Shown here piece after piece: positions 484-64,000 of a stretch of DNA of 64,000 nucleotides. This DNA is from Octopus bimaculoides (Eukaryota). The notes below the pieces were generated by a model that saw nothing but the letters and a program-made list of their open reading frames with translations, did not search any database and had not been told where the DNA came from. Position numbers and translations under genes: made by a program. Each line of letters begins with the position of its first letter. Positions within the stretch are counted from its first letter, which is position 1. Where the stretch lies: NCBI RefSeq assembly GCF_001194135.2, contig NC_068991.1, positions 22,617,330-22,681,329 on the forward strand. Direction: 5' to 3'.

Positions 484-1031
484 ATATGTGCCTGTGGAGA
501 CACTTGCTATAACTGTTGTTGCTGTTATTGCTGTTTGTATATCAAGTACATTAGGATGATGCAAAACTATTGTTACAACAACTTTAGTAATCCAGGCACT
601 GCCTGAATTTACTAACCTTTTTTTTGCTGTTGTTCTCCAGTGAATCTAAGCTTCAGTTTTTGGTTGAGATTATTTTCACTTACATTACTAATATTTGTGA
701 AAGTAACCAAAAATGTTACTTTCCATTAAGTATTCATCCTTTGCCAGTTAAATAATCTTTCATCCAACCCACATCAATTTCTTTTTTGTCTTTGGTAAAC
801 CAGTTTTTCTCCATTTTTGACCTCACTAGCCTTTCTCACTTGTTTTATTGAGTATTTCAATTTTATTCATCCTATTGAGATGGCTGTCCCCACGCATTCC
901 CACAACTTTTTTTTTTCCTCTTGAACTGATCTTGGTAGCAGTGTTTCACTGGTTACTTTGTATTTCATATCATCATTATATTAATAACCCTGCAGATTTT
1001 CGGGTTGCACACAAAGGGAGATCTTGCATTG

Positions 1032-8467: not shown

Positions 8468-9362
8468 CAAGGTGCAGCAAAATGATCTGACACATTTGTA
8501 GGCTTAGTAAAAGTGAAATAGAGAAAAGAATGAAAAATGTGTTTTTATTTTTGAAATGTACATATAATGCCATTTTGTTTTATTTGGTTTTAGAAATTAA
8601 ATCAGTCAGGTGGATGCTGTTACTGTCCACATACTGTCGAAGGCGTTCACAAAAGTTGTCCATAACCTGACAGGCAATTTCATGTGGAATGGCAGCAATT
8701 TCTTTATGAATTGTATCTTAATTGTTCAATAGATTGAGGGCAATAAGTGTATACCTCTGATTTCAGGTATCCCCACGGAAAAAAATTGCATGAGTTCAAA
8801 TCAGGTGGGCAAACCAATGTCACCGCTCAATGAGATCAAATGACCAGGGAACATTTCCCTCAAAATTCCCACTGCACTTTGAGAAGTGTGGGCTCTTGCC
8901 CCATCCTGCTGAAACCAAACATTGTCCCTATCATCAAGTTCATTCAATTTGGGTTTCAGAAAAGTCTCTAGCATCACACAATATCAATCGGAGTTTACAG
9001 TCACTGTAACATTGTCTTCTTCCAAGATGTACAGACCCCAAAATGCCAAATTCTGCTGCTGTACAATTTCGAGTAGGTACAGGATCATGTCTACCAAGCC
9101 TGAAGTGCACATTGAACACTCTTCGTGTTGCAGTTATGGATTTGTTGTTCTTGATAAACATTTCCACAATGAAAGTGTGATGCTCAACCATTCAGTTCAT
9201 GTTGGCAACTGAAAATGAATTGAAACAGAATGTCACAAATGGCACCAATTGAAACAAAATAGCATTATATGTACATTTCGAAAATAAAAATACATGTTTC
9301 ATTCTTTTCTCTATTTCACTTTTATTAAACCTACAGATGTGTCAAAGAATTTTAGTCACCTG
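8468..9362 (-). mobile_element. Internally deleted Tc1/mariner element with ~115-bp TIRs
   Basis: Left TIR (8468-~8585) matches the reverse complement of ~9245-9362; TA on the left. Minus-strand peptides MVEHHTFIVEMFIKNNKSI (N-terminal HTH), VWFQQDGARAHT and PDLNSCNFFPWGYLKSEVY. Confidence 0.92.
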
Positions 9363-15905: not shown

Positions 15906-17158
15906 TTGGGTCATCCCATAAATAATGCAGTTTTTTAATACTTTTACTTTTCAAAATTAAGATAAACTTCTTTTTTAATCTAAAATATACTCTCCTTCAT
16001 TTTCTACAAAGCTCTTTCATTTCCCTGGTAGACTTGCAAGACCTTTCTTTCAAAATTCACTTATCCATCACAAAAAATACTCCTCCAGTACTGTTCTGAC
16101 CTCATCTACAGAATTCATATTTTTTCCATCCAAATGATTTTGAAGACTACAGAATAAATGATTATCAGATGGGGCAATGTCTGGCAAATATGGTGGGTGG
16201 GACATCATTTCCCATTCAAACTGCTCCAGCCTTTTAAATGTTATCCTCACTGTATGTGGCCAAGCATTATCCTGATGGAAGAACACCTTTTGTCTTGAAA
16301 CCAAAGATGGTCGTTTTTCTTGTAGCGCTGACTTATGCTGCTCAAGCTCGCAATAGATTTCCTTTATCATTTGGTTTAAGCTTAAAAGTTCAAAGTGGAC
16401 TAAGCACCTCATATCCCACCAAACAGGTAACACCACCTTGCATAGATAAAGACCTTCTTTAGCCTGGGGTGCCTGTGTTTCTCCTTTCCCTGCCCACTGT
16501 CTTCAGCTTTTGGTATTTTTATGGAGAACCTGTTTCTGGCACCAGTCACTGTTCAGTCCAAAAAAAGGTTCATTCGTGAGATGTGATGGCAAAGAAGAGC
16601 ACACATTCATTCTCTACATGCAATTAGACTCAGAAAGTTTTTGAGGAACCCATTGACCCAATTTGCTGACTTTTCCGAAGGCATGCAGGTGTCGATGAAT
16701 GGTTGAATGACCAAATCCAAGATTCTCTGCTAATTCCTCAACAGTTACAATGGGATTTTGTTCCACCAGGGTTTGCAGGACATCCTCATCAAGCTCTACA
16801 GATCTTCCAGGATGAGGCTCGTCTTCTAGGCTGTAGTTTCTGGCTCGGAATTTCTGGAACCACCATTGACACTGGCTTACACTTATTATCTAATCCTCAT
16901 ATACTGCATTAATATTCTTCACTCTTTCTGTTGTGTTGTTGCCTTTATTGAACTCTTAAAACAAAATATGCTCCTTTGTCACTTCCATCGTAGTTTGTTA
17001 AAATTGAAGTGTACTTTTCAAAACTTACACTAAGAATAAGGACAAGGTAAAATTACTACCTGCTTTTATAGCAAGTTGATGCAGGTGGTTTATCCCATCC
17101 CCCTCTGACTTTTAGTTCATGCAATTGAAAAAACTGCATTATTTATGGGATGAACCAA
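15906..17158 (-). mobile_element. Near full-length mariner (DD34D-type) with decayed transposase, 1253 bp
   Basis: 31-bp TIRs TTGG(G/T)TCATCCCATAAATAATGCAGTTTTTT (30/31 identical) with TA on both sides. ORF 16068-16436 contains FHQDNAWPH and HPPYLPDIAPSDNHLF; upstream WFQKFR..YSLEDEPHPGR in broken frames. Confidence 0.95.
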
Positions 17159-53499: not shown

Positions 53500-53730
53500 T
53501 TCTCTACCATATGTTCTCTTTGAATGTCTGTCTGTGTGTCTGTCTCTCTGTCTGTCTGTCTCTCTATCTGTCTGTCTGTCTCTCTATCTGTCTGTTTGTC
53601 TCTCTATCTGTCTGTCTTTCTGTCTGTTTGTTTGTCCTTCTATCTCTATCTTTCTATTTGTTTGTCTCTCTATCTCTCTCTCTCTTTGTTTGTCTCTCTC
53701 TCTCTATCTATCTCTCTGTCTGTCTCCCTT
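53500..53730. repeat. Compound (TCTG/TCTA/CT)n microsatellite
   Basis: Visible directly in the sequence. Confidence 0.9.
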
Positions 53731-56285: not shown

Positions 56286-56354
56286 GAGGTAAATATTTCC
56301 CTCCAACTATTCTTAAGTCAATGTTGCTAATTCTTACTTTTGTGACTTTTGCAG

Positions 56355-56406
56355 ACCATTCTTCACTGACCGAGGGAATTTAATTGAAATGGCTGATATA
56401 CCTAAG
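56355..56406 (+). CDS. PACS2: PACS exon, (R)PFFTDRGNLIEMADIPK (52 nt, phase 2-0)
   Basis: Acceptor gacttttgcAG and donor AAG|GTAAAG. Completes the split Arg codon and continues the conserved KPxLRP(F/Y)F motif. Confidence 0.92.
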
Positions 56407-56640
56407 GTAAAGGTTGTTTATTTTGTTTAACATTGTTCATTGACTTTGTCCTGTTTGGTATCATATGTTTTAATGCAAAGCCGTTTTCAAGATAAACTTA
56501 TTTCAATGCTAACCTATTTGTCTTTTAGAGATTAATGCTGTCAGAATTTATGTCTTTAATTTTACTCATCCATGGTCACCAGCCTTTATCATGTATTGTA
56601 TCATAAACTCTCATCACATACTTGGTTGGCAACATTTGGT

Positions 56641-57237
56641 ACAGATGTGTTAACCAACCCTTGCCACAGCTGTCATCACCTACCCATGCTGCAGCTGTCT
56701 CCATCAAGCTTTGCCACAGCTGTGTTCACCAACCCATGGTGCACCTGTGTTCATCAACCTATGGTGCAGTTGTGTTCACCAACCCATGGTGCAGGTCTGT
56801 TCACCACCTCATGGTACAATTGTGTTTGCCATTCCTTGGTGCAGTTGTGTTCATCAATTCTTAGCACAGCTTTGTTCACCAACCCTTGTCACAGCTGTGT
56901 TCATTAACCCTCATCACAGCTGTGTTCATTAGCCCTCGCCTCAGTTGTATTCACCAACCCTTGACACAGCTGTGTTCAGCTTTTGCCTCATCTATGTTCA
57001 TCAATTCTTGGCCCGGCTGTGTTCACCTACCCTTAGCACAGCTGTTCACCAATGCTTCACACATCAGTGATCATCAGTCCATGTAACAAGTGTGTTCACC
57101 AACCCATAACACAGCTGTGGTCACCAACTAACAGGTCAGTTGTGATTACCAATCCTTGATACAGCTATGATTATCAAACCATGACACAGCTAAAGATACT
57201 AATCTTTGGTACAACTGTTTTCACCAAACTTTGAAAC
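56641..57237. repeat. Degenerate 25-bp minisatellite (~24 units)
   Basis: Consensus ~CACAGCTGTGTTCACCAACCCTTGG; CANNTG recurs at 25-bp spacing (56667, 56692, 56717, 56742, 56767...). Confidence 0.92.
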
Positions 57238-58225
57238 GGCTGAGAAGTTAACAGTTCATTTACTGACATTGGCACTGCATTATGTCTATTCAAGGCACTT
57301 GGCTCAAGTCCACCTAAATACATACCAGAGCAGCAGCTGCAACACTAGGAATTGATGAGATGTGTTGGCATGCAATTAAGAAAAGCTACTTGTGGTAGAC
57401 CAACATCACATCCAGTGGCAGTTTTATCCCGTATCCAATTAACATTAATTGAAAATGGTATGGTTAGCTTAGATGTATGTTTCTTACTATATATGTTTCT
57501 CTTCGCCAGCATCATCCTCATCCTTTCACCATCATTATCATCATCGTCATATCACTGCTTCACTGTAGTATATCTGAACTATTGTCTCATCAGTTTTCTA
57601 CATTCTTCTTTTCTACTTGCCTACACCCAATCAGGTGAGCAATTTTGTTTTACAAAAACCTTCTCTGATCAGTAAAACCAACCAACCAACCAACCAACCA
57701 TCCAATCAACCAAATACCTGCATGCCACCTTGGTGTTTGGTATATATTCGCTGGATGAATGCAGTTGCCATTAATGTCATTGTAATTGTTTGCAGTTGTA
57801 TCTGTTGCAGTGATGCTGTGTTGTACCATTTAGTGATGAGTTGAAGATTTTGCTAAATGACAGAAAAGTCTTTTGCTACACTCCCAACAACACATTTTCC
57901 TCATTTACAAATAGTAGTCGCTTTTGCCTTTACTCCTATCCCTCAATCCTTACAGGGTTTCTGATACCCACCCACCATTGCTTTTGTCTTAACTGAGGTA
58001 GAATAAAAAATATATAGTCGCCCAGCTATCATTCAAAACCTGACATGAACAGTGGCTCTGAGATTACCTAAATTAAAAAGGTGAGTTTAAGACTCTGCTT
58101 AGAAAAATAGCTAAACACAGAAAATATATATATATTCATGATAGAGAAAATTTTCACAAAACCCTCAATGCACAAATTAAAAGTTAATTTTTTTATATAT
58201 TTAATTTTCTCTTTCTTTTGTCTAG

Positions 58226-58231
58226 ACACAG
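58226..58231 (+). CDS. PACS2: Probable 6-nt PACS microexon ACACAG (Thr-Gln), phase 0-0
   Basis: Context ttttctctttcttttgtctAG-ACACAG-GTATGA: long polypyrimidine tract, strong donor, frame-neutral between two phase-0 junctions. Confidence 0.6.
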
Positions 58232-61200
58232 GTATGAGATATTTTTTTATGAAGGTACCATGATTAGCTTCACTTGTAATACATATGTTATGCATCTTGT
58301 GTACACAATCAAAAAGGGGCAATCAAAACTGGTAGGATTCGATTTCAAACTGGTTCTGCTGCACACTATGTACTTCATACAAGTAATTTCTGTATATGTT
58401 CAGTTCAGTATCTCCATATCCCCATTTGACTGCACACTTCACTGTTAGTGCCCTTTGTCCTTTAGTATCTCTTCAGAATGAGATGCACAACAGGAGATAA
58501 CATCATAAGAAATCTTTGAAGTAACAAACCCAACATGGCCTCATATTAGGAATGAATGACTTCATTCATTATACCTCCATCAAATAATACCAATTGCCAC
58601 CTGGGGAGAAGGGTAATTACCAAATTCAAGAATTATTGGTTTGCACTGTTTCCATGGCCCTTGATAAAGCTTCTTACAGAATGTATATTGTAAAAATTTG
58701 TCCTCCAGTTTCAGATGAATGGGTAGTGTTACTACTTTAAAATTCCCTCAAATCCTACATAGTTAGGCAAATTTCCTCTAATCTTTTTGTTTTTTCTTTT
58801 TGTAACTCAGTCTATTATTTTGTTAAGTCAGTGCTTTGATAATTGTATTGATATCAATAAAGATATCCCAGGGCTGTGACTGCAACCAGTTTGCCTGTGC
58901 TATATCAAGAACTGGTCCTGCTCAACATATATAAAATGTATTTTTATCTGTAATTTCTGTATGAAAAAAAGTGTATGTGTGGCATGGTTCTTGACATAGT
59001 ATTGTTACAGTCATTTTCTCTTCACTAAGCTTTGCTTTGGGACTGTATGCTATATGATGAGTTGTTTGTTATACACTCTAGTGTAGCAAATAGTCATTTG
59101 CTCATCCATTTGATCAGTAGTATCTTTCAAGAGACAACAATCTCAAATCAGCTTCAGAGAAAAAAAAATTAGAAGTTGTGAAGTTCATGTCCTTCATAAG
59201 TGTATTATTGGAATAGACAAAACAGTTCAGAGTTTGCTGAAAGCTTACCACCAGTACTACCTTTTGCTATCTTTATAACTGTTGTGTATTGACGTAGTCA
59301 AAATATCGATTTATTCTGAGAGATGTGTATCATGGTTATAACAAGACTTGTGTGTGTGTGTGTGTGTGTGTTTATGTAGAAGGGTTGTGATTTATTGCAT
59401 TGATACCCTTTATGTTACTGGTATTTATTACATCGAACCCTGTTGGAGTTGGAACTCAACAGTGTAGGAAATTTGCATCTAGCCTAGCACTCTACTGCTT
59501 TATAACCTACCATTCTCTATTAGTATATATGCAGGGGAGACAACTATTTCGGAGTGGCTATAAAAGTAGAAGGTTGTTGATAATCCAGCATTTATGATCC
59601 AAAATTTTCTTTGACCAACCCAACTTTCATTCGGACACAACATCCTCCATTCGTTAGGGTTGACCATGTGTCTGTGCCTGGAAAGTTCCCCCTCCCCTCA
59701 AGATGTAGACTTTGGTGACATTTCTTGATTGAAAAACCAGTAGCTATCCATATAGCAAATCTCTCACCATTCCACTGAGGTTGTTCAAAAAAAGTAATGG
59801 CTGATAGAGTTTGGTAACATAGTCATTGTTGGTAAACTCAGAATGTAAAGAGCCACAAGACATTTAGTCCAACACACCAACAATTCTGTTAAATCCACTG
59901 TCTTCACTGTGTGTCTAATCTCATGTCATTCGTTTTTTAAGGTAGTAGGGTGTGATTTGATTAAGATTTGGTGGCTGTTTCCCATAGGTTGAGTGGTCAT
60001 GGAAAGTTCCACCCTTCAACTGTAGAAGCATGTGACAGAGGTTAAATAGAACAAGATGAGGTGACACAGGATAGGACTGAAGTATGAAGAAGTGATGTAT
60101 TGCAGAGCTTTCTTACTCCTGGCAGCATGGAAAAATTGCTGTCAGATCAATGTTAATGATGATGATGATGATAGTGATAGTGATGAGAATAAATTGTTTT
60201 GAAATTCAGTGTTATTTATAACTAAACTTTGAGTGACAGAGCCACTGGTTGACATCAGGTCAGATATGCAGCATTTGTCACTGCAGTGTGTCACTACATC
60301 CACCATTTGTCACTATCTACTTAGGTCATCCCGAGCAACCCTCAGAGTAGTGTCTAACTCCACAAAATACTTCCTCATTTGGGTTGGACACATGTGGCAT
60401 ATGGCCAACCAACACAAGCTGCCATCCCAGCTGAATCTTCAGAAAAGAGAATATGGTATGCAGGATCAAACTAATAAAATTGAGCAACATGACCAAACAA
60501 TCTAAGCAATGTCACATTGCTGAATCATAAAAATAACAGGCAGCATCCCAGTTTCTGAGTATCGTCATTGGTTGGGTACAAAATCTAACCAACAATAACC
60601 CAAGCCTCCTGGTACCAAAGGAGTTCAGGTAGCCCCTAAGAGCTCCAGACATTGTCTAAGTTTCACAGCTGAATAGGGAGAAGCAGAGACCCAAAGACTC
60701 AAACCTTTGTCCTCCTGCTCAGCTATAAGCAGCACCAAACATCCTTGTCCAATGAATGCACAACTGCACCAGCACACCCAAGTCTTTGTACTTGCAGCTA
60801 ATGCTGAGATATTCATTATTTATTTATACTTTAAGTCTCTTCTGAAAATACTGCTATTTGTGTGACATTTCATTTTCATGAAGCTTACAACTACCAGATG
60901 GCAGTTGATCCATGTCCCATGCCCACCCATACTAAAAGGTATGGGTGGGTATGAATCAGAATAATGTCTGATAATAAATGTCTTGAGTGATATCTAGTAC
61001 ACTCAGTTTTTTTTTTTTAAGTGTCTGTTTCTTTGAAGTCTTTTTATTCACTTAAAAAAAAAAACAAATTACTTACCCTTTCAAGATGTTTTAGGTGATC
61101 TTTCAACCTGCTATATTTGTTTTTTATTTTTTTTTTATTAAGTGTATGTACTTTTTTTAAAATCTATTTAGTTTTTATCAAAGAATTTTAAATAATGACA

Positions 61201-62414
61201 CCCTTATTCTTTAATTGTCTCTTTAGGAAAAACTTTTTTTTTTAGTACAGAACCTTCAGTAGGTTTTTGTCTTGAGTCAAAATGATTTACTCAATGTCTA
61301 ATGTTCTTTTGAATGTAATTTTTCTCTCTCATTGTGACTATAGAGTGCCACATGAAACACTTTAGTGTATTTAGGAGGGTTCTACAGGAGTGTGGTAAGT
61401 TCAGTTGCTGTTAGCATGAGAAGTGTATTTACTTTCCACTATTTCACTTCTCTCATTTCAAATTCCACCAGATTCAATTTCACTTTTCATTCTACCTAGG
61501 ATAAATACCAGTATTATTTTGGAATCAACTCAAGTCAAGTGACTTTTCCTTTCTCTCAAACAAAATTAGCCTTTTAACTAGTCCCATAACCTCCAACAAT
61601 TTCAGTTTGAATTCATCAGAGTCAATTCTTGTTTGGTCAAGAATTTAGTACTGGTTTGGCCATCTATATTAATGAAATACTTTTTTTTTTTAAGAAGTAG
61701 CTTTCAGGTTTTAAAATCAATGGATTCAAGATTATAGAATAGTGGAGAAATAAACCAAAGGGTTAATGGTTTGTATCTTGTGACTGGTGCTGAGCTATAT
61801 TTATGACAAAAGCCCTCAGTTGCAGTAGATATTAGATAGTTACAACTTATAAATGTAGAAACAAGCAGCAGTAAAGAAATCGATCAGTGCTTTTCATCTC
61901 TTTCAATATTCTCTTCAAGTCTTCTCATGGATATTGTTTGGAAAAGAATTCTACCAACCTCTCTTTCTCTAAATACGCTACACGAAGATGAAATTTTCAG
62001 CAGTGGTGCCCTTACAATTCATAGAGTTCTAGGCCTCATCAAAATGTTTTCTAAAGCTCATGCTGTATATGTGTGTGTGTGTGTGTGTGTATAAGCAAAT
62101 TAGTTAGTTAGAAAATCTCTATAAGAGGTGAAAGCAGTAGCCACACTGAGAAGTCATGCTTATTACCACTTAAATATGGCTGTGTGTTTCTAATGACCAA
62201 AGAGCATATAACATCATATCTGAACATATTACTCATTTAAATTTGGTGAAGAAGGAGCCAAGTTTAATNNNNNNNNNNNNNNNNNNNNNNNNNNNNNNNN
62301 NNNNNNNNNNNNNNNNNNNNNNNNNNNNNNNNNNNNNNNNNNNNNNNNNNNNNNNNNNNNNNNNNNNNNNNNNNNNNNNNNNNNNNNNNNNNNNNNNNNN
62401 NNNNNNTCTGCACC

Positions 62415-62650
62415 ATTTGACTAACTACACCCCTCTTTCTGCTGGAGGACTAACCATTCTCCCTCTCTCTCTCTCTCTCTCTCTGCCAGAGGACTAACTA
62501 TCCCATCTTGCTTTCTACCAGAGGACTAACCACATCCCTTCTCTTTACCAACTTAACTACTCTCTTCCCTCTCAATACTAAATAATTAACCACTCTCCCC
62601 TCCTCTTTCACATACCTGATTACTAACTCCTTCACTCCCCTTATTGGTAG
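62415..62650 (+). promoter_or_regulatory. Array of ACTAAC + polypyrimidine (+AG) units, candidate splicing-regulatory element
   Basis: ACTAAC at 62420, 62449, 62493, 62525 and 62622 (TACTAAC), each followed by a C/T tract. Sense to PACS and 120-350 nt upstream of exon 62771. Confidence 0.5.
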
Positions 62651-62770
62651 ATGGCAAACTCTCTCCCACAATGCTTAGGTGGCTAAAACTTCCTTCCAAT
62701 CAGCTCAAAAGCTGGTCTTTTCAGAAATGCCACCTTATTATCATTGTCTTTGAATTCCGTCTGTTAACAG

Positions 62771-62833
62771 GCTAGTCCCGTGAAATCTTTGAGTGAAGAC
62801 AACTACAAGAGACCCGACTCTGACACTCATGCG
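62771..62833 (+). CDS. PACS2: Probable PACS exon, ASPVKSLSEDNYKRPDSDTHA (63 nt, phase 0-0)
   Basis: Acceptor gtctttgaattccgtctgttaacAG and donor GCG|GTATGT. Open frame compatible with the upstream phase and CpG-retaining. It lies in the poorly conserved linker, so support is splice-signal based. Confidence 0.75.
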
Positions 62834-63438
62834 GTATGTGACTCCCTAATGCCTAGAAACTCTTTCTCTCCCTCGCTCTCTCTCTCTTTCTTTCTTTCTT
62901 TCTCTGTTTCTCTTTCTCTCTCTTTATTTCATTTCTTAATTATTTAAAAATTTTTTAGAATAACAAAATTATTTTTTTCCTTCATTGTTTTGTGTTGTTT
63001 TTCTTAATTTATTAATTTATTTCCTTAGCAGTGTTTCTCAAGTACATCAATTGTGTCATTGGGAACTTATAAACGGACATACAATTTGAACAGAAAACAT
63101 TGAGTTTTCTTTTTTTTAGTGTTTTTCAAAACTTACAAGATAAGATTATAACTTTTTGGACTATTAAGGCTATATTTTAGCAATGAAGATCGTTTTCATT
63201 TTTCTTTTACATTCCATTCTAGCAATGTATATTCCTTTAAAAGAGATTAGGTTTAATAAACTGAAAAACTATAATCCTATTAATTCATGTTAGGCATTTA
63301 ATTAATTATTGATTGTAATGTTTTTGTTTGTATATTTCTTTTTTGTGTCTTCATATAAAAAGAAACATGGTTATAGGTGTCTCATTAATTATTTGTCCTT
63401 TTCTTTCTGAATTTCTAAGTCTCCAGCCTATATGTATA

Positions 63439-63503
<65 letters not shown>

Positions 63504-64000
63504 ATATCTGTGTGTATATATATGTGTGTGTATATATATGTATGTATATATATATCTGTGTGTGTGTGTGTATATATATGTGTGTGTGGATATGTATATA
63601 TATTTTCACGAAACAATCGTAAGATAATTTTAGATTACCAACATACACATATTTGCACTCACACATACATATTTTTATATTTAAACTTATATTCATTATT
63701 ATATTTTTACATCTATTTTTTTATATATATAATATAATTTTTTCTACATTTTTATAACTTAAGGCAAAAAGTATGTGATATAAAAAAATTATATATCATT
63801 TTGAAAGCTTCGAATATTGATTTCCTGACTCCAACATATCTACATATGTTTTTTATAAATATATATATAATAGCTCGTATTAACTGTATTAATATTTTCA
63901 AATTTATAAAAAAATTTTAATATTACTGATACCATAATATATACGAGCACTCAATATAAATTCAGCATATCATATTCCTATTGAATATTTCTAATCAATG

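What the first reader, a model, noticed from the sequence alone, without database searches (positions are those of the whole stretch)
62415..62650. Tandem array of branch-point / 3' splice-site mimics upstream of a PACS exon
Seen: five ACTAAC (62420, 62449, 62493, 62525, and a perfect TACTAAC at 62621) plus CTTAAC and ATTAAC variants, each followed by a pyrimidine tract. Units end in GAG (62447), CAG (62489, 62521) or TAG (62650), and 62524-62648 is AG-free. All are on the PACS sense strand; the array abuts a gap and may be longer. Use of the in-phase AGs at 62521 or 62650 hits TAA before exon 62771. Known: ACUAAC is both the branch-point consensus (SF1/U2) and the STAR-family QKI/HOW motif, and QKI regulates microexons. 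Inference: a repeat-built decoy or STAR-protein platform controlling the microexon/exon 62771 choice or NMD coupling. This is the best candidate for an undescribed mechanism in the window.
Basis: partly seen in the sequence, partly recalled or inferred. Interest (0 to 1): 0.75.

Follow-up and report, generated by a model that had tools for sequence, protein, structure and literature searches.

The report
Branch-site-like repeat beside a cassette exon
A decayed, single-copy tandem repeat in an intron puts five perfect ACUAAC motifs and CU-rich tracts 120-360 bases upstream of an alternatively skipped 63-base exon; none of its AGs is spliced to, so it is a plausible but untested protein-binding splicing silencer of a known kind, not a new mechanism.

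Summary
Five ACTAAC (62420, 62449, 62493, 62525, 62622) and two near-variants lie on the + strand, each followed by a pyrimidine tract. The stated GAG/CAG/TAG positions and the in-phase stop codons are also correct.

The cluster is a degenerate ~30-nt minisatellite of about seven units. It is too decayed for Tandem Repeats Finder and is single-copy in four DNA data sets, so it is not an interspersed repeat.

RNA reads show that exon 62771-62833 is a real cassette exon. It is mostly skipped in one library and included in two others. Its own polypyrimidine tract is weak, and it sits between two of the four most pyrimidine-rich tracts in the window.

None of 44 exon-spanning raw reads lies in the array. 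One unbroken unspliced contig runs through the array in each of three RNA assemblies. The pseudo-acceptors are therefore not used at detectable levels.

The AG-free stretch is not significant. Related taxa are too close to test conservation.

My preferred reading, by inference only (about 0.45), is an upstream silencer platform for STAR proteins (QKI/HOW) and PTB. A neutral passenger repeat is almost as likely (about 0.40).

Tandem ACUAAC/CUAAC elements and decoy-3'ss-plus-PTB elements are already described. If the array is functional, it is a new member of a known kind.

The parts
62411..62650 (+). Degenerate minisatellite of about 7 units of 29-44 nt. Unit pattern: (T/C)ACC-N5-ACTAAC-YAY followed by a C/T-rich tract. 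Composition C 37%, T 33%, A 22%, G 8%.
   Evidence: in-register families D1, D2; not found by TRF even at score 30
62420..62425 (+). ACTAAC core of unit 1. The first AG downstream lies 23 nt from the branch A (GAG ending 62447).
62449..62454 (+). ACTAAC core of unit 2, followed by the (TC)13 tract and CAG ending 62489.
62458..62484 (+). (TC)13 microsatellite inside unit 2. It is 6 nt shorter in the contigs of two other DNA runs.
62493..62498 (+). ACTAAC core of unit 3, followed by CAG ending 62521 (in phase, reaches a stop codon).
62525..62530 (+). ACTAAC core of unit 4. There is no AG for the next 121 nt.
62551..62557 (+).
62577..62590 (+). ACTAAA-TA-ATTAAC, the decayed core(s) of unit 6. In related taxon B, 62584-62585 read GG, giving GTTAAC.
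62621..62650 (+). TACTAAC core of unit 7, then a pyrimidine tract and TAG. This is the best pseudo-3' splice site. It is in phase and meets TAA at 62684-62686. No use of it was seen.
62269..62406 (.). Assembly gap of 138 N. The true gap is at least about 299 nt, and its sequence could not be read.
62651..62770 (+). Proximal intron with five further AGs. The real 3' splice site is AG at 62769-62770, with a weak pyrimidine tract (65% Y, longest run 5). The exon's own AG-free zone is 62725-62768, and the likely branch site is CTTAT at 62734-62738.
62771..62833 (+). 63-nt in-frame cassette exon (ASPVKSLSEDNYKRPDSDTHA). It is included or skipped depending on the library and joins three alternative downstream partners that lie outside the window.
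62847..62937 (+). CT-rich tract and tandem repeat just downstream of the cassette exon, with the highest density of PTB-like motifs (25 per 100 nt).
56355..56406 (+). Upstream exon (..PFFTDRGNLIEMADIPK), donor of the 6.4-kb intron that holds the array.

Best explanation
Shown: the feature is a locus-specific, old and decayed minisatellite inside the 6.4-kb intron 56407-62770. Each unit carries an ACUAAC-type core and a CU-rich tract on the transcribed strand. The RNA is predicted to be largely unstructured. None of its AGs serves as a splice acceptor at detectable level.

Inferred: the array acts as a multivalent binding platform on single-stranded RNA. STAR-family proteins (the QKI/HOW orthologue, in competition with SF1) would bind the five ACUAAC cores. 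PTB-type proteins would bind the (UC)n and UCUU tracts. The array sits 120-360 nt upstream of a 63-nt cassette exon whose own polypyrimidine tract is weak, and a second CU-rich tract lies just downstream of that exon. In tissues that express these proteins, occupancy would repress the exon's 3' splice site and promote skipping. The same occupancy would keep the pseudo-acceptors, which look strong on paper, silent.
For: Structure:
- Units lie in register.
- There is exactly one contig per DNA run, at single-copy depth, and no other copy in the window.
- Folding is not better than shuffles (z = -1.5), and the array is mostly unpaired.

Regulated exon:
- Reads leaving exon 56406 join the skipped form in most X40 reads. 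They join the included form in X41 and X42.

Weak real site against strong silent mimics:
- The real 3'ss is 65% Y with a longest run of 5. The pseudo-sites are 78-96% Y with ACTAAC 23-36 nt upstream.
- There are zero reads in 62487-62768 among 44 exon-spanning reads.
- One unbroken unspliced contig runs through the array in each of 3 RNA assemblies.

Motif emphasis:
- ACTAAC is the only 6-mer with at least 5 copies in the array; its neighbouring 6-mers do not reach that count.
- In the old units U1 and U7 the core matches U4 at 12 of 12 positions, against 23 of 40 in the flanks. Fisher p = 0.005, but the alignment was anchored on the core.

CU context:
- The exon is bracketed by the 3rd and 4th most pyrimidine-rich 200-nt windows of the 64 kb.
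- PTB-like motifs reach 12 and 25 per 100 nt on the two sides, against 2.1 for the window.

Precedent:
- QKI represses exons through tandem ACUAAC upstream of the 3'ss (PMC13004596).
- ASD-2 binds CUAAC repeats to block a 3'ss (PMC3469465).
- PTB represses an exon through distant flanking pyrimidine tracts (PMC2905242).
Against: - There is no binding, mutational or expression-correlation data. The mechanism rests on motif content alone.
- The strict QKI bipartite site (ACUAAY-N1-20-UAAY) is absent from the array. The cores lie 144-351 nt from the 3'ss, not at branch-site distance as in RAI14.
- The array evolves no more slowly than the proximal intron between related taxa: 8 events in 164 nt against 3 in 118 nt. 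The cores escaping change is expected by chance (P = 0.28-0.52).
- One variant core differs in the related taxon.
- The better-kept parts of the unit are exactly the G-free parts. A general loss of G on this strand could mimic motif conservation.
- The window carries many other minisatellites, and a reader looking for this motif will find some by chance across a genome.
Confidence: 0.45

Rival explanations
1. Neutral passenger. An ordinary decayed intronic minisatellite whose unit happened to contain ACTAAC and a CT tract. It has no measurable effect on splicing.
For: - The window is full of minisatellites with unrelated units: 56636-57128 in the same intron, 36106-36424, 45248-45492 and 53527-53726.
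- The sense strand is pyrimidine-rich throughout.
- The array shows no extra conservation between related taxa.
- The AG-free zone is not significant.
- No RNA product involves the array.
- The motif was found by a reader who was looking for it.
Against: - The core hexamer is kept intact in 5 of 7 otherwise strongly diverged units.
- The array sits directly upstream of a demonstrably regulated exon with a weak 3'ss, and a CU-rich tract lies on the other side of that exon.
- Five high-affinity STAR sites on accessible RNA would be expected to be bound wherever the protein is present. This last point rests on knowledge of the family, not on a test here.
Confidence: 0.4
2. True decoy or NMD-coupled acceptors. 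The pseudo-3' splice sites at 62489/62491, 62521 and 62650 are used at a low level, or engage U2 non-productively. They yield stop-containing transcripts that NMD removes, which lowers PACS output or competes with the real site.
For: - Four units have a consensus branch site, a strong pyrimidine tract and an AG at 23-36 nt.
- In-phase use meets stop codons.
- Decoy 3'ss plus PTB sites is a known element type (PMC2082412).
Against: - No junction read or graph branch at any of these AGs in 3 raw-read libraries and 3 RNA assemblies.
- The AG-bearing spacer is the least conserved part of the unit, and three units have no AG.
- In100-type decoys act on the exon upstream of them. Here that exon lies 6 kb away and was present in all reads.
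Confidence: 0.07
3. Distant branch points. One or more of the ACUAAC are the real branch sites used to splice exon 62771, as in exons with long AG-exclusion zones.
For: The real 3'ss has no consensus branch site and a weak tract. Exons with distant branch points are often regulated (PMC1431707).
Against: - Five AGs (62649, 62677, 62702, 62710, 62723) lie between the last ACTAAC and the real AG. The exon's AG-free zone starts only at 62725.
- A plausible CTTAT branch site lies 33 nt upstream of the real AG.
Confidence: 0.04
4. Fragment or tail of a transposable element.
For: - A multi-copy element lies just left of the gap at 62095-62183.
- Gaps often mark repeats.
- A mariner remnant lies elsewhere in the window.
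Against: The array itself is single-copy in four DNA runs at 85-90% likeness or better. It has no other copy in the window, and there is no tRNA-like or Rfam match.
Confidence: 0.03

Closest known systems
Tandem ACUAAC branch-site elements with QKI/SF1 competition (RAI14 exon 11; PMC13004596)
   Same: Repeated perfect ACUAAC on the pre-mRNA upstream of a cassette exon. The predicted outcome is exon repression by a STAR protein that masks sites SF1 could use.
   Different: RAI14 has two elements at 34 and 43 nt, which are the exon's real branch sites. Here five cores lie 144-351 nt upstream, separated from the exon by five AGs, and were built by a tandem repeat. Binding was not tested.
CUAAC repeats bound by STAR protein ASD-2 in C. 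elegans unc-60 intron 1A (PMC3469465)
   Same: An intronic run of CUAAC repeats next to a second repeat-like element for a partner protein (UGUGUG for SUP-12 there, CU tracts here). That complex represses a 3' splice site in a tissue-specific way.
   Different: The nematode repeats are short, adjacent to the branch site or 3'ss, and conserved among three species. The array here is a 240-nt minisatellite further upstream, and its conservation is unknown.
In100-like decoy 3' splice site plus PTB sites (caspase-2; PMC2082412)
   Same: A branch-site-like sequence, a pyrimidine tract and an unused AG, combined with PTB-type CU tracts in an intron near an alternative exon.
   Different: In100 is a single element downstream of the exon it silences. 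Here the element is multi-copy and upstream of the alternative exon, and several units lack the AG.
PTB repression through distant flanking pyrimidine tracts, and exons with AG-exclusion zones (PMC2905242, PMC1431707)
   Same: A regulated exon with a weak proximal 3'ss, bracketed by long CU-rich tracts.
   Different: The AG-exclusion zone does not reach the exon, so the array does not qualify as its branch-point region.
Ordinary intronic minisatellite
   Same: Head-to-tail units of about 30 nt, a single locus, decayed, with an embedded microsatellite of polymorphic length.
   Different: The unit core coincides with the branch-site/STAR consensus and is kept better than the rest of the unit.

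Membership tests
STAR-protein (QKI/HOW/ASD-2) response element | Two or more (A)CUAAY cores close together on the transcribed strand | tested here: met
   Five ACTAAC on the + strand, start-to-start spacing 29, 44, 32 and 97 nt
STAR-protein (QKI/HOW/ASD-2) response element | Bipartite QKI site ACUAAY-N(1-20)-UAAY | tested here: not met
   The regex scan finds such sites elsewhere in the window but none in 62407-62650. Neighbouring cores are 23-38 nt apart.
STAR-protein (QKI/HOW/ASD-2) response element | Lies in an intron beside an alternatively spliced exon | tested here: met
   Exon 62771-62833 is skipped or included depending on the library
STAR-protein (QKI/HOW/ASD-2) response element | Direct binding by the protein, and a splicing change on motif mutation or protein loss | not testable with these tools
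   Needs EMSA or CLIP and a minigene or knock-down
STAR-protein (QKI/HOW/ASD-2) response element | Motif conservation across species | tested here: inconclusive
   Cores are intact in two related haplotypes, but divergence is only 1-5%. P(no hit by chance) is 0.28-0.52.
Decoy 3' splice site (In100-like) | Branch-site-like sequence, pyrimidine tract and AG that is not productively used | tested here: met
   Four units qualify. No junctions to them were seen. The other three units lack an AG.
Decoy 3' splice site (In100-like) | Promotes skipping of the exon immediately upstream | tested here: inconclusive
   The upstream exon 56355-56406 lies 6 kb away. In reads laid on exon 62771, the only upstream partner shown was 56406. 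Skipping of 56355-56406 itself was not tested.
Distant branch point / AG-exclusion-zone exon | No AG between the branch point and the used 3' splice site | tested here: not met
   AG at 62649, 62677, 62702, 62710 and 62723
Recursive (ratchet) splice site | A 3' splice site directly followed by a 5' splice-site consensus (AG|GTRAGT) | tested here: not met
   The contexts are AG|AGGACT, AG|GACTAA and AG|ATGGCA
Interspersed repeat / transposable element | Many copies dispersed in the genome | tested here: not met
   One contig per run on 62407-62457 at 90% or better. Single-copy word depth over 62492-62824. No other copy in the window.
Minisatellite | Head-to-tail units of 10-100 nt in register | tested here: met
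   Families D1 and D2 at 65-73% identity. Too decayed for TRF.
Known RNA families (Rfam), tRNA-derived elements | Match to a covariance model or a tRNA fold | tested here: not met
   No hit in the array. The only hits are sub-threshold microsatellite matches at 63419-63674. No tRNA.

The most novel reading that the evidence does not exclude
The array is a selected, repeat-built 'branch-site sponge'. Its copy number of ACUAAC plus CU units sets how strongly SF1/U2AF or their STAR and PTB competitors are held away from the weak real 3' splice site. Expansion or contraction of the minisatellite would then act as an evolvable rheostat for inclusion of the PACS cassette exon. Such sense-strand arrays might recur near regulated exons in cephalopod genomes.
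Probability: 0.1. Interest if true: 0.6.

Novelty: new member of a known kind. Interest (0 to 1): 0.3.

Why it matters
If the array does control the 63-nt exon, it would show how a tandem repeat can create a multivalent STAR/PTB silencer in one step. It would also extend ACUAAC-repeat splicing control, known from nematodes and mammals, to molluscs. That would give a simple, testable handle on tissue-specific splicing in cephalopods.

If the array is neutral, it is a useful caution. Strong-looking branch-site, tract and AG mimics can sit unused next to a weaker real site, and motif-rich repeats in repeat-rich introns are expected by chance.

Tried and rejected
1. Closing the gap. Contigs extend 292-299 nt into it, but the tool does not print sequence that runs past the stretch.
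3. Laying RNA on 56300-62858 was swamped by microsatellite joints, and the real junction rows were not shown. Narrow stretches solved this.
4. Finding orthologous loci through the protein database. The 99-aa exon concatenation returned only one 77-aa ORF from an assembled public run (Logan), identical to the window, and no cephalopod PACS proteins. No orthologous introns could therefore be fetched.
5. Pfam on the exon-encoded peptide gave nothing, so the PACS label rests only on remembered resemblance: KPQLRPFF and PRKVLLDQL against human PACS1 KPKLKPFF and PRKVVYDQL.
6. Rfam and tRNA scans gave nothing in the array.
7. RNA structure is not better than shuffles. The 13-nt inverted repeat 62508-62520 / 62645-62657 is treated as chance.
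8. Self-BLAST of the window gave only microsatellite matches.
9. Recursive splicing and distant-branch-point readings were rejected on sequence.
10. The significance of the AG-free zone was rejected.

Full report
OBSERVATION. ACTAAC occurs on the + strand at 62420, 62449, 62493, 62525 and 62622, the last as TACTAAC from 62621. AG dinucleotides start at 62446, 62488, 62490, 62520, 62522 and 62649, and none lies between 62524 and 62648. Acceptors ending at 62491, 62521 and 62650 are in phase with exon 62771 and meet stop codons. The whole window has only 26 ACTAAC on both strands against 39 expected, so five within 208 nt is not chance. The AG-free run is not significant: the array is 7.8% G, and 31% of composition-matched shuffles have as long a run.

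ANATOMY.
- The cluster exists because the region is a degenerate tandem repeat. In-register families of 4-5 copies show 65-73% identity and spacings of 29-44 nt. The repeat is too decayed for Tandem Repeats Finder even at score 30.
- About seven units can be laid out as (T/C)ACC-N5-ACTAAC-YAY followed by a C/T-rich tract of variable length. Unit 2 contains a (TC)13 microsatellite.
- Units 2-4 are clear recent copies (CTGCYRGAGG-ACTAAC). Units 1 and 7 keep ACC and the hexamer, but their 5-nt spacer AGAGG has become ATTTG or TGATT. Unit 5 has a one-base insertion in the core and unit 6 a C>T change.
- ACTAAC is the only 6-mer that reaches five copies here. The overlapping neighbour 6-mers do not, unlike in the other repeats of the window.
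- Against unit 4, the old units U1 and U7 match at 12 of 12 core positions and 23 of 40 flanking positions. Fisher p = 0.005, inflated because the alignment is anchored on the core.
- The AG-bearing spacer is the least conserved part, and three units have no AG. What is kept is the core plus the tract, not a complete acceptor mimic.
- A caveat applies: the kept parts are also the G-free parts, so general loss of G on this strand could give the same picture.
- The RNA is predicted to be mostly unpaired and folds no better than shuffles (z = -1.5).

COPY NUMBER AND RELATIVES.
- Each of four DNA data sets has exactly one contig matching 62407-62457 at 90% or better. Region 62492-62824 sits at single-copy word depth.
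- Nothing else in the window resembles the array apart from CT microsatellites. There is no Rfam or tRNA-like match. It is therefore not an interspersed repeat.
A search for diverged, analogous arrays could not be run.
- The gap is understated: contigs run 292-299 nt left of 62407 without reaching the left flank. The array may therefore be longer, but I could not read that sequence.
- A related taxon (coded organism B) carries the array in two haplotypes. One has 5 substitutions in the array. The other has 7 substitutions and a 4-nt deletion in 62487-62650, against 3 events in the 118-nt proximal intron and none in the exon.
- No change hits an ACTAAC core, but that is expected by chance (P = 0.52 and 0.28). 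ATTAAC reads GTTAAC there. These taxa are too close to test conservation, and the array is not slower-evolving than its surroundings.

GENE CONTEXT AND RNA.
- RNA contigs and reads define three exons: one ending at 52689 (..TSTPKPQLR), 56355-56406 (PFFTDRGNLIEMADIPK) and 62771-62833 (ASPVKSLSEDNYKRPDSDTHA; 63 nt, in frame). The array lies in the 6.4-kb intron 56407-62770.
- Exon 62771-62833 is a true cassette exon. Reads leaving 56406 mostly continue into GAGCAGGCTGACC (the next exon, so the cassette is skipped) in library X40: consensus agreement 0.67 over 10 reads. They continue into GCTAGTCCC (inclusion) in X41 (11 reads) and X42 (4 reads).
- The exon joins three different downstream partners, all outside the window. 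No microexon was seen between 56406 and 62771.
- In three raw-read RNA libraries all 44 reads on the exon are spliced at both ends, and depth is zero across 62487-62768.
- In three RNA assemblies of the related taxon, an unspliced contig of 637-661 nt runs without a break from about 356 nt upstream of 62487, through the array and into the exon. Its depth is about a quarter of the exon's. The only branches are at the real 3'ss and 5'ss.
- Junctions to 62490, 62492, 62522 or 62651 are therefore absent at the level these data can see, roughly a few percent. NMD could hide rarer products.

SPLICE-SITE COMPARISON.
- The real acceptor is weak: 65% pyrimidines at -25..-3, longest run 5 nt, and no consensus branch site. 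CTTAT at 62734 lies 33 nt upstream.
- The pseudo-acceptors have 78-96% pyrimidines, runs up to 28 nt, and ACTAAC 23-36 nt upstream.
- Five AGs separate the last ACTAAC from the real AG, and the exon's own AG-free zone starts at 62725. The array is therefore not its distant branch-point region.
- No pseudo-acceptor is followed by a 5'ss-like sequence, so recursive splicing is excluded.
- The exon is bracketed by the third and fourth most pyrimidine-rich 200-nt windows of the 64 kb. PTB-like motifs reach 12 per 100 nt upstream and 25 per 100 nt downstream, against 2.1 for the window.

MECHANISM.
- Shown: a decayed, single-copy minisatellite with ACUAAC cores and CU tracts on accessible sense-strand RNA, next to a regulated exon with a weak 3'ss, and not itself spliced to.
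- Inferred (about 0.45): it works as a multivalent upstream silencer platform. A QKI/HOW-type STAR protein binds the ACUAAC cores in competition with SF1, and PTB-type proteins bind the CU tracts on both sides of the exon. Together they repress the exon and keep the strong-looking mimics silent.
- This follows established behaviour of these families. QKI represses exons via tandem ACUAAC and blocks SF1 (PMC13004596). ASD-2 on CUAAC repeats blocks a 3'ss together with a partner protein on an adjacent repeat (PMC3469465). PTB acts through distant flanking tracts (PMC2905242).
- Almost as likely (about 0.40) is a neutral passenger repeat. The window has many minisatellites, the sense strand is pyrimidine-rich throughout, there is no conservation signal, and the motif was found by a reader looking for it.
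- Minor rivals are low-level decoy or NMD acceptors (0.07), distant branch points (0.04) and a TE fragment (0.03).

COMPARISON AND NOVELTY. Every element of the proposed mechanism has a described precedent, including decoy 3'ss plus PTB sites as a family of intronic signals (PMC2082412) and exons with AG-exclusion zones (PMC1431707). Three things differ here. The sites were generated by a minisatellite. There are five cores rather than two. They lie upstream of, not at, the branch-site position. The strict QKI bipartite spacing is not met. If functional, the array is a new member of a known kind; if not, it is an ordinary repeat. The claim of an undescribed mechanism is not supported.

LIMITS. 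Organisms are coded and no cephalopod proteins were in the searchable database. The PACS and octopus labels, deep conservation and genome-wide strand or exon bias all remain untested. Read counts are small (about 6% of each raw run is read).

Noticed in passing
window 56636-57128: A large minisatellite (25-nt unit TTGGCACAGCTGTGTTCACCAACCC, about 20 copies) begins 230 nt downstream of exon 56355-56406, in the same intron as the array. It is open in all three + frames.
   Followed up: no
window 62847-62937: A CT-rich tandem repeat lies directly downstream of the cassette exon. With the array, it brackets the exon between the 3rd and 4th most pyrimidine-rich 200-nt windows of the 64 kb.
   Followed up: partly
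window 62771-62835 and beyond 64000: Exon 62771-62833 joins three alternative downstream exons that lie outside the window (GAGCAGGCTGACC.., GTGCCATGTGTG.., CCTCGTAAAGTT..). The exon itself is skipped in one library. This is a complex alternative-splicing hotspot in the disordered middle of the protein.
   Followed up: partly
window 62095-62183: A multi-copy interspersed repeat lies just left of the gap. DNA word depth is in the hundreds to tens of thousands, with many contigs at about 88% identity.
   Followed up: no
window 62269-62406: The gap length (138 N) is underestimated. Contigs from three DNA runs extend 292-299 nt left of 62407 without reaching the left flank.
   Followed up: partly
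whole window: TACTAAC occurs 8 times on the + (sense) strand and never on the - strand (7 to 0 outside the array, binomial p = 0.016). ACTAAC outside the array is 14 to 7. This may be a sense-strand bias of the branch-site consensus in this gene's introns.
   Followed up: partly
window 62458-62484: The (TC)13 microsatellite inside the array is 6 nt shorter in the contigs of two other DNA runs of the same organism, a length polymorphism.
   Followed up: no
window 16071-16889 (- strand): A mariner-type transposase remnant lies antisense in an intron (Pfam Transposase_1 E = 1e-11, plus an HTH ORF). A possible second remnant is at 8804-9191, with no Pfam hit.
   Followed up: partly
window 45248-45492: A young tandem repeat: 61-nt unit, 4 copies, 96% identity.
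   Followed up: no
window 610-640: TACTAAC followed by a strong pyrimidine tract and CAG 25 nt downstream looks like a genuine 3' splice site. No open reading frame or RNA evidence was examined.
   Followed up: no
window 62487-62858 in RNA runs X25-X27: Unspliced intron on both sides of the cassette exon is present at about a quarter to 40% of exon depth in three RNA assemblies of the related taxon. It is absent from the three raw-read libraries of organism A. This could be slow splicing, intron retention, or a difference in library type.
   Followed up: no
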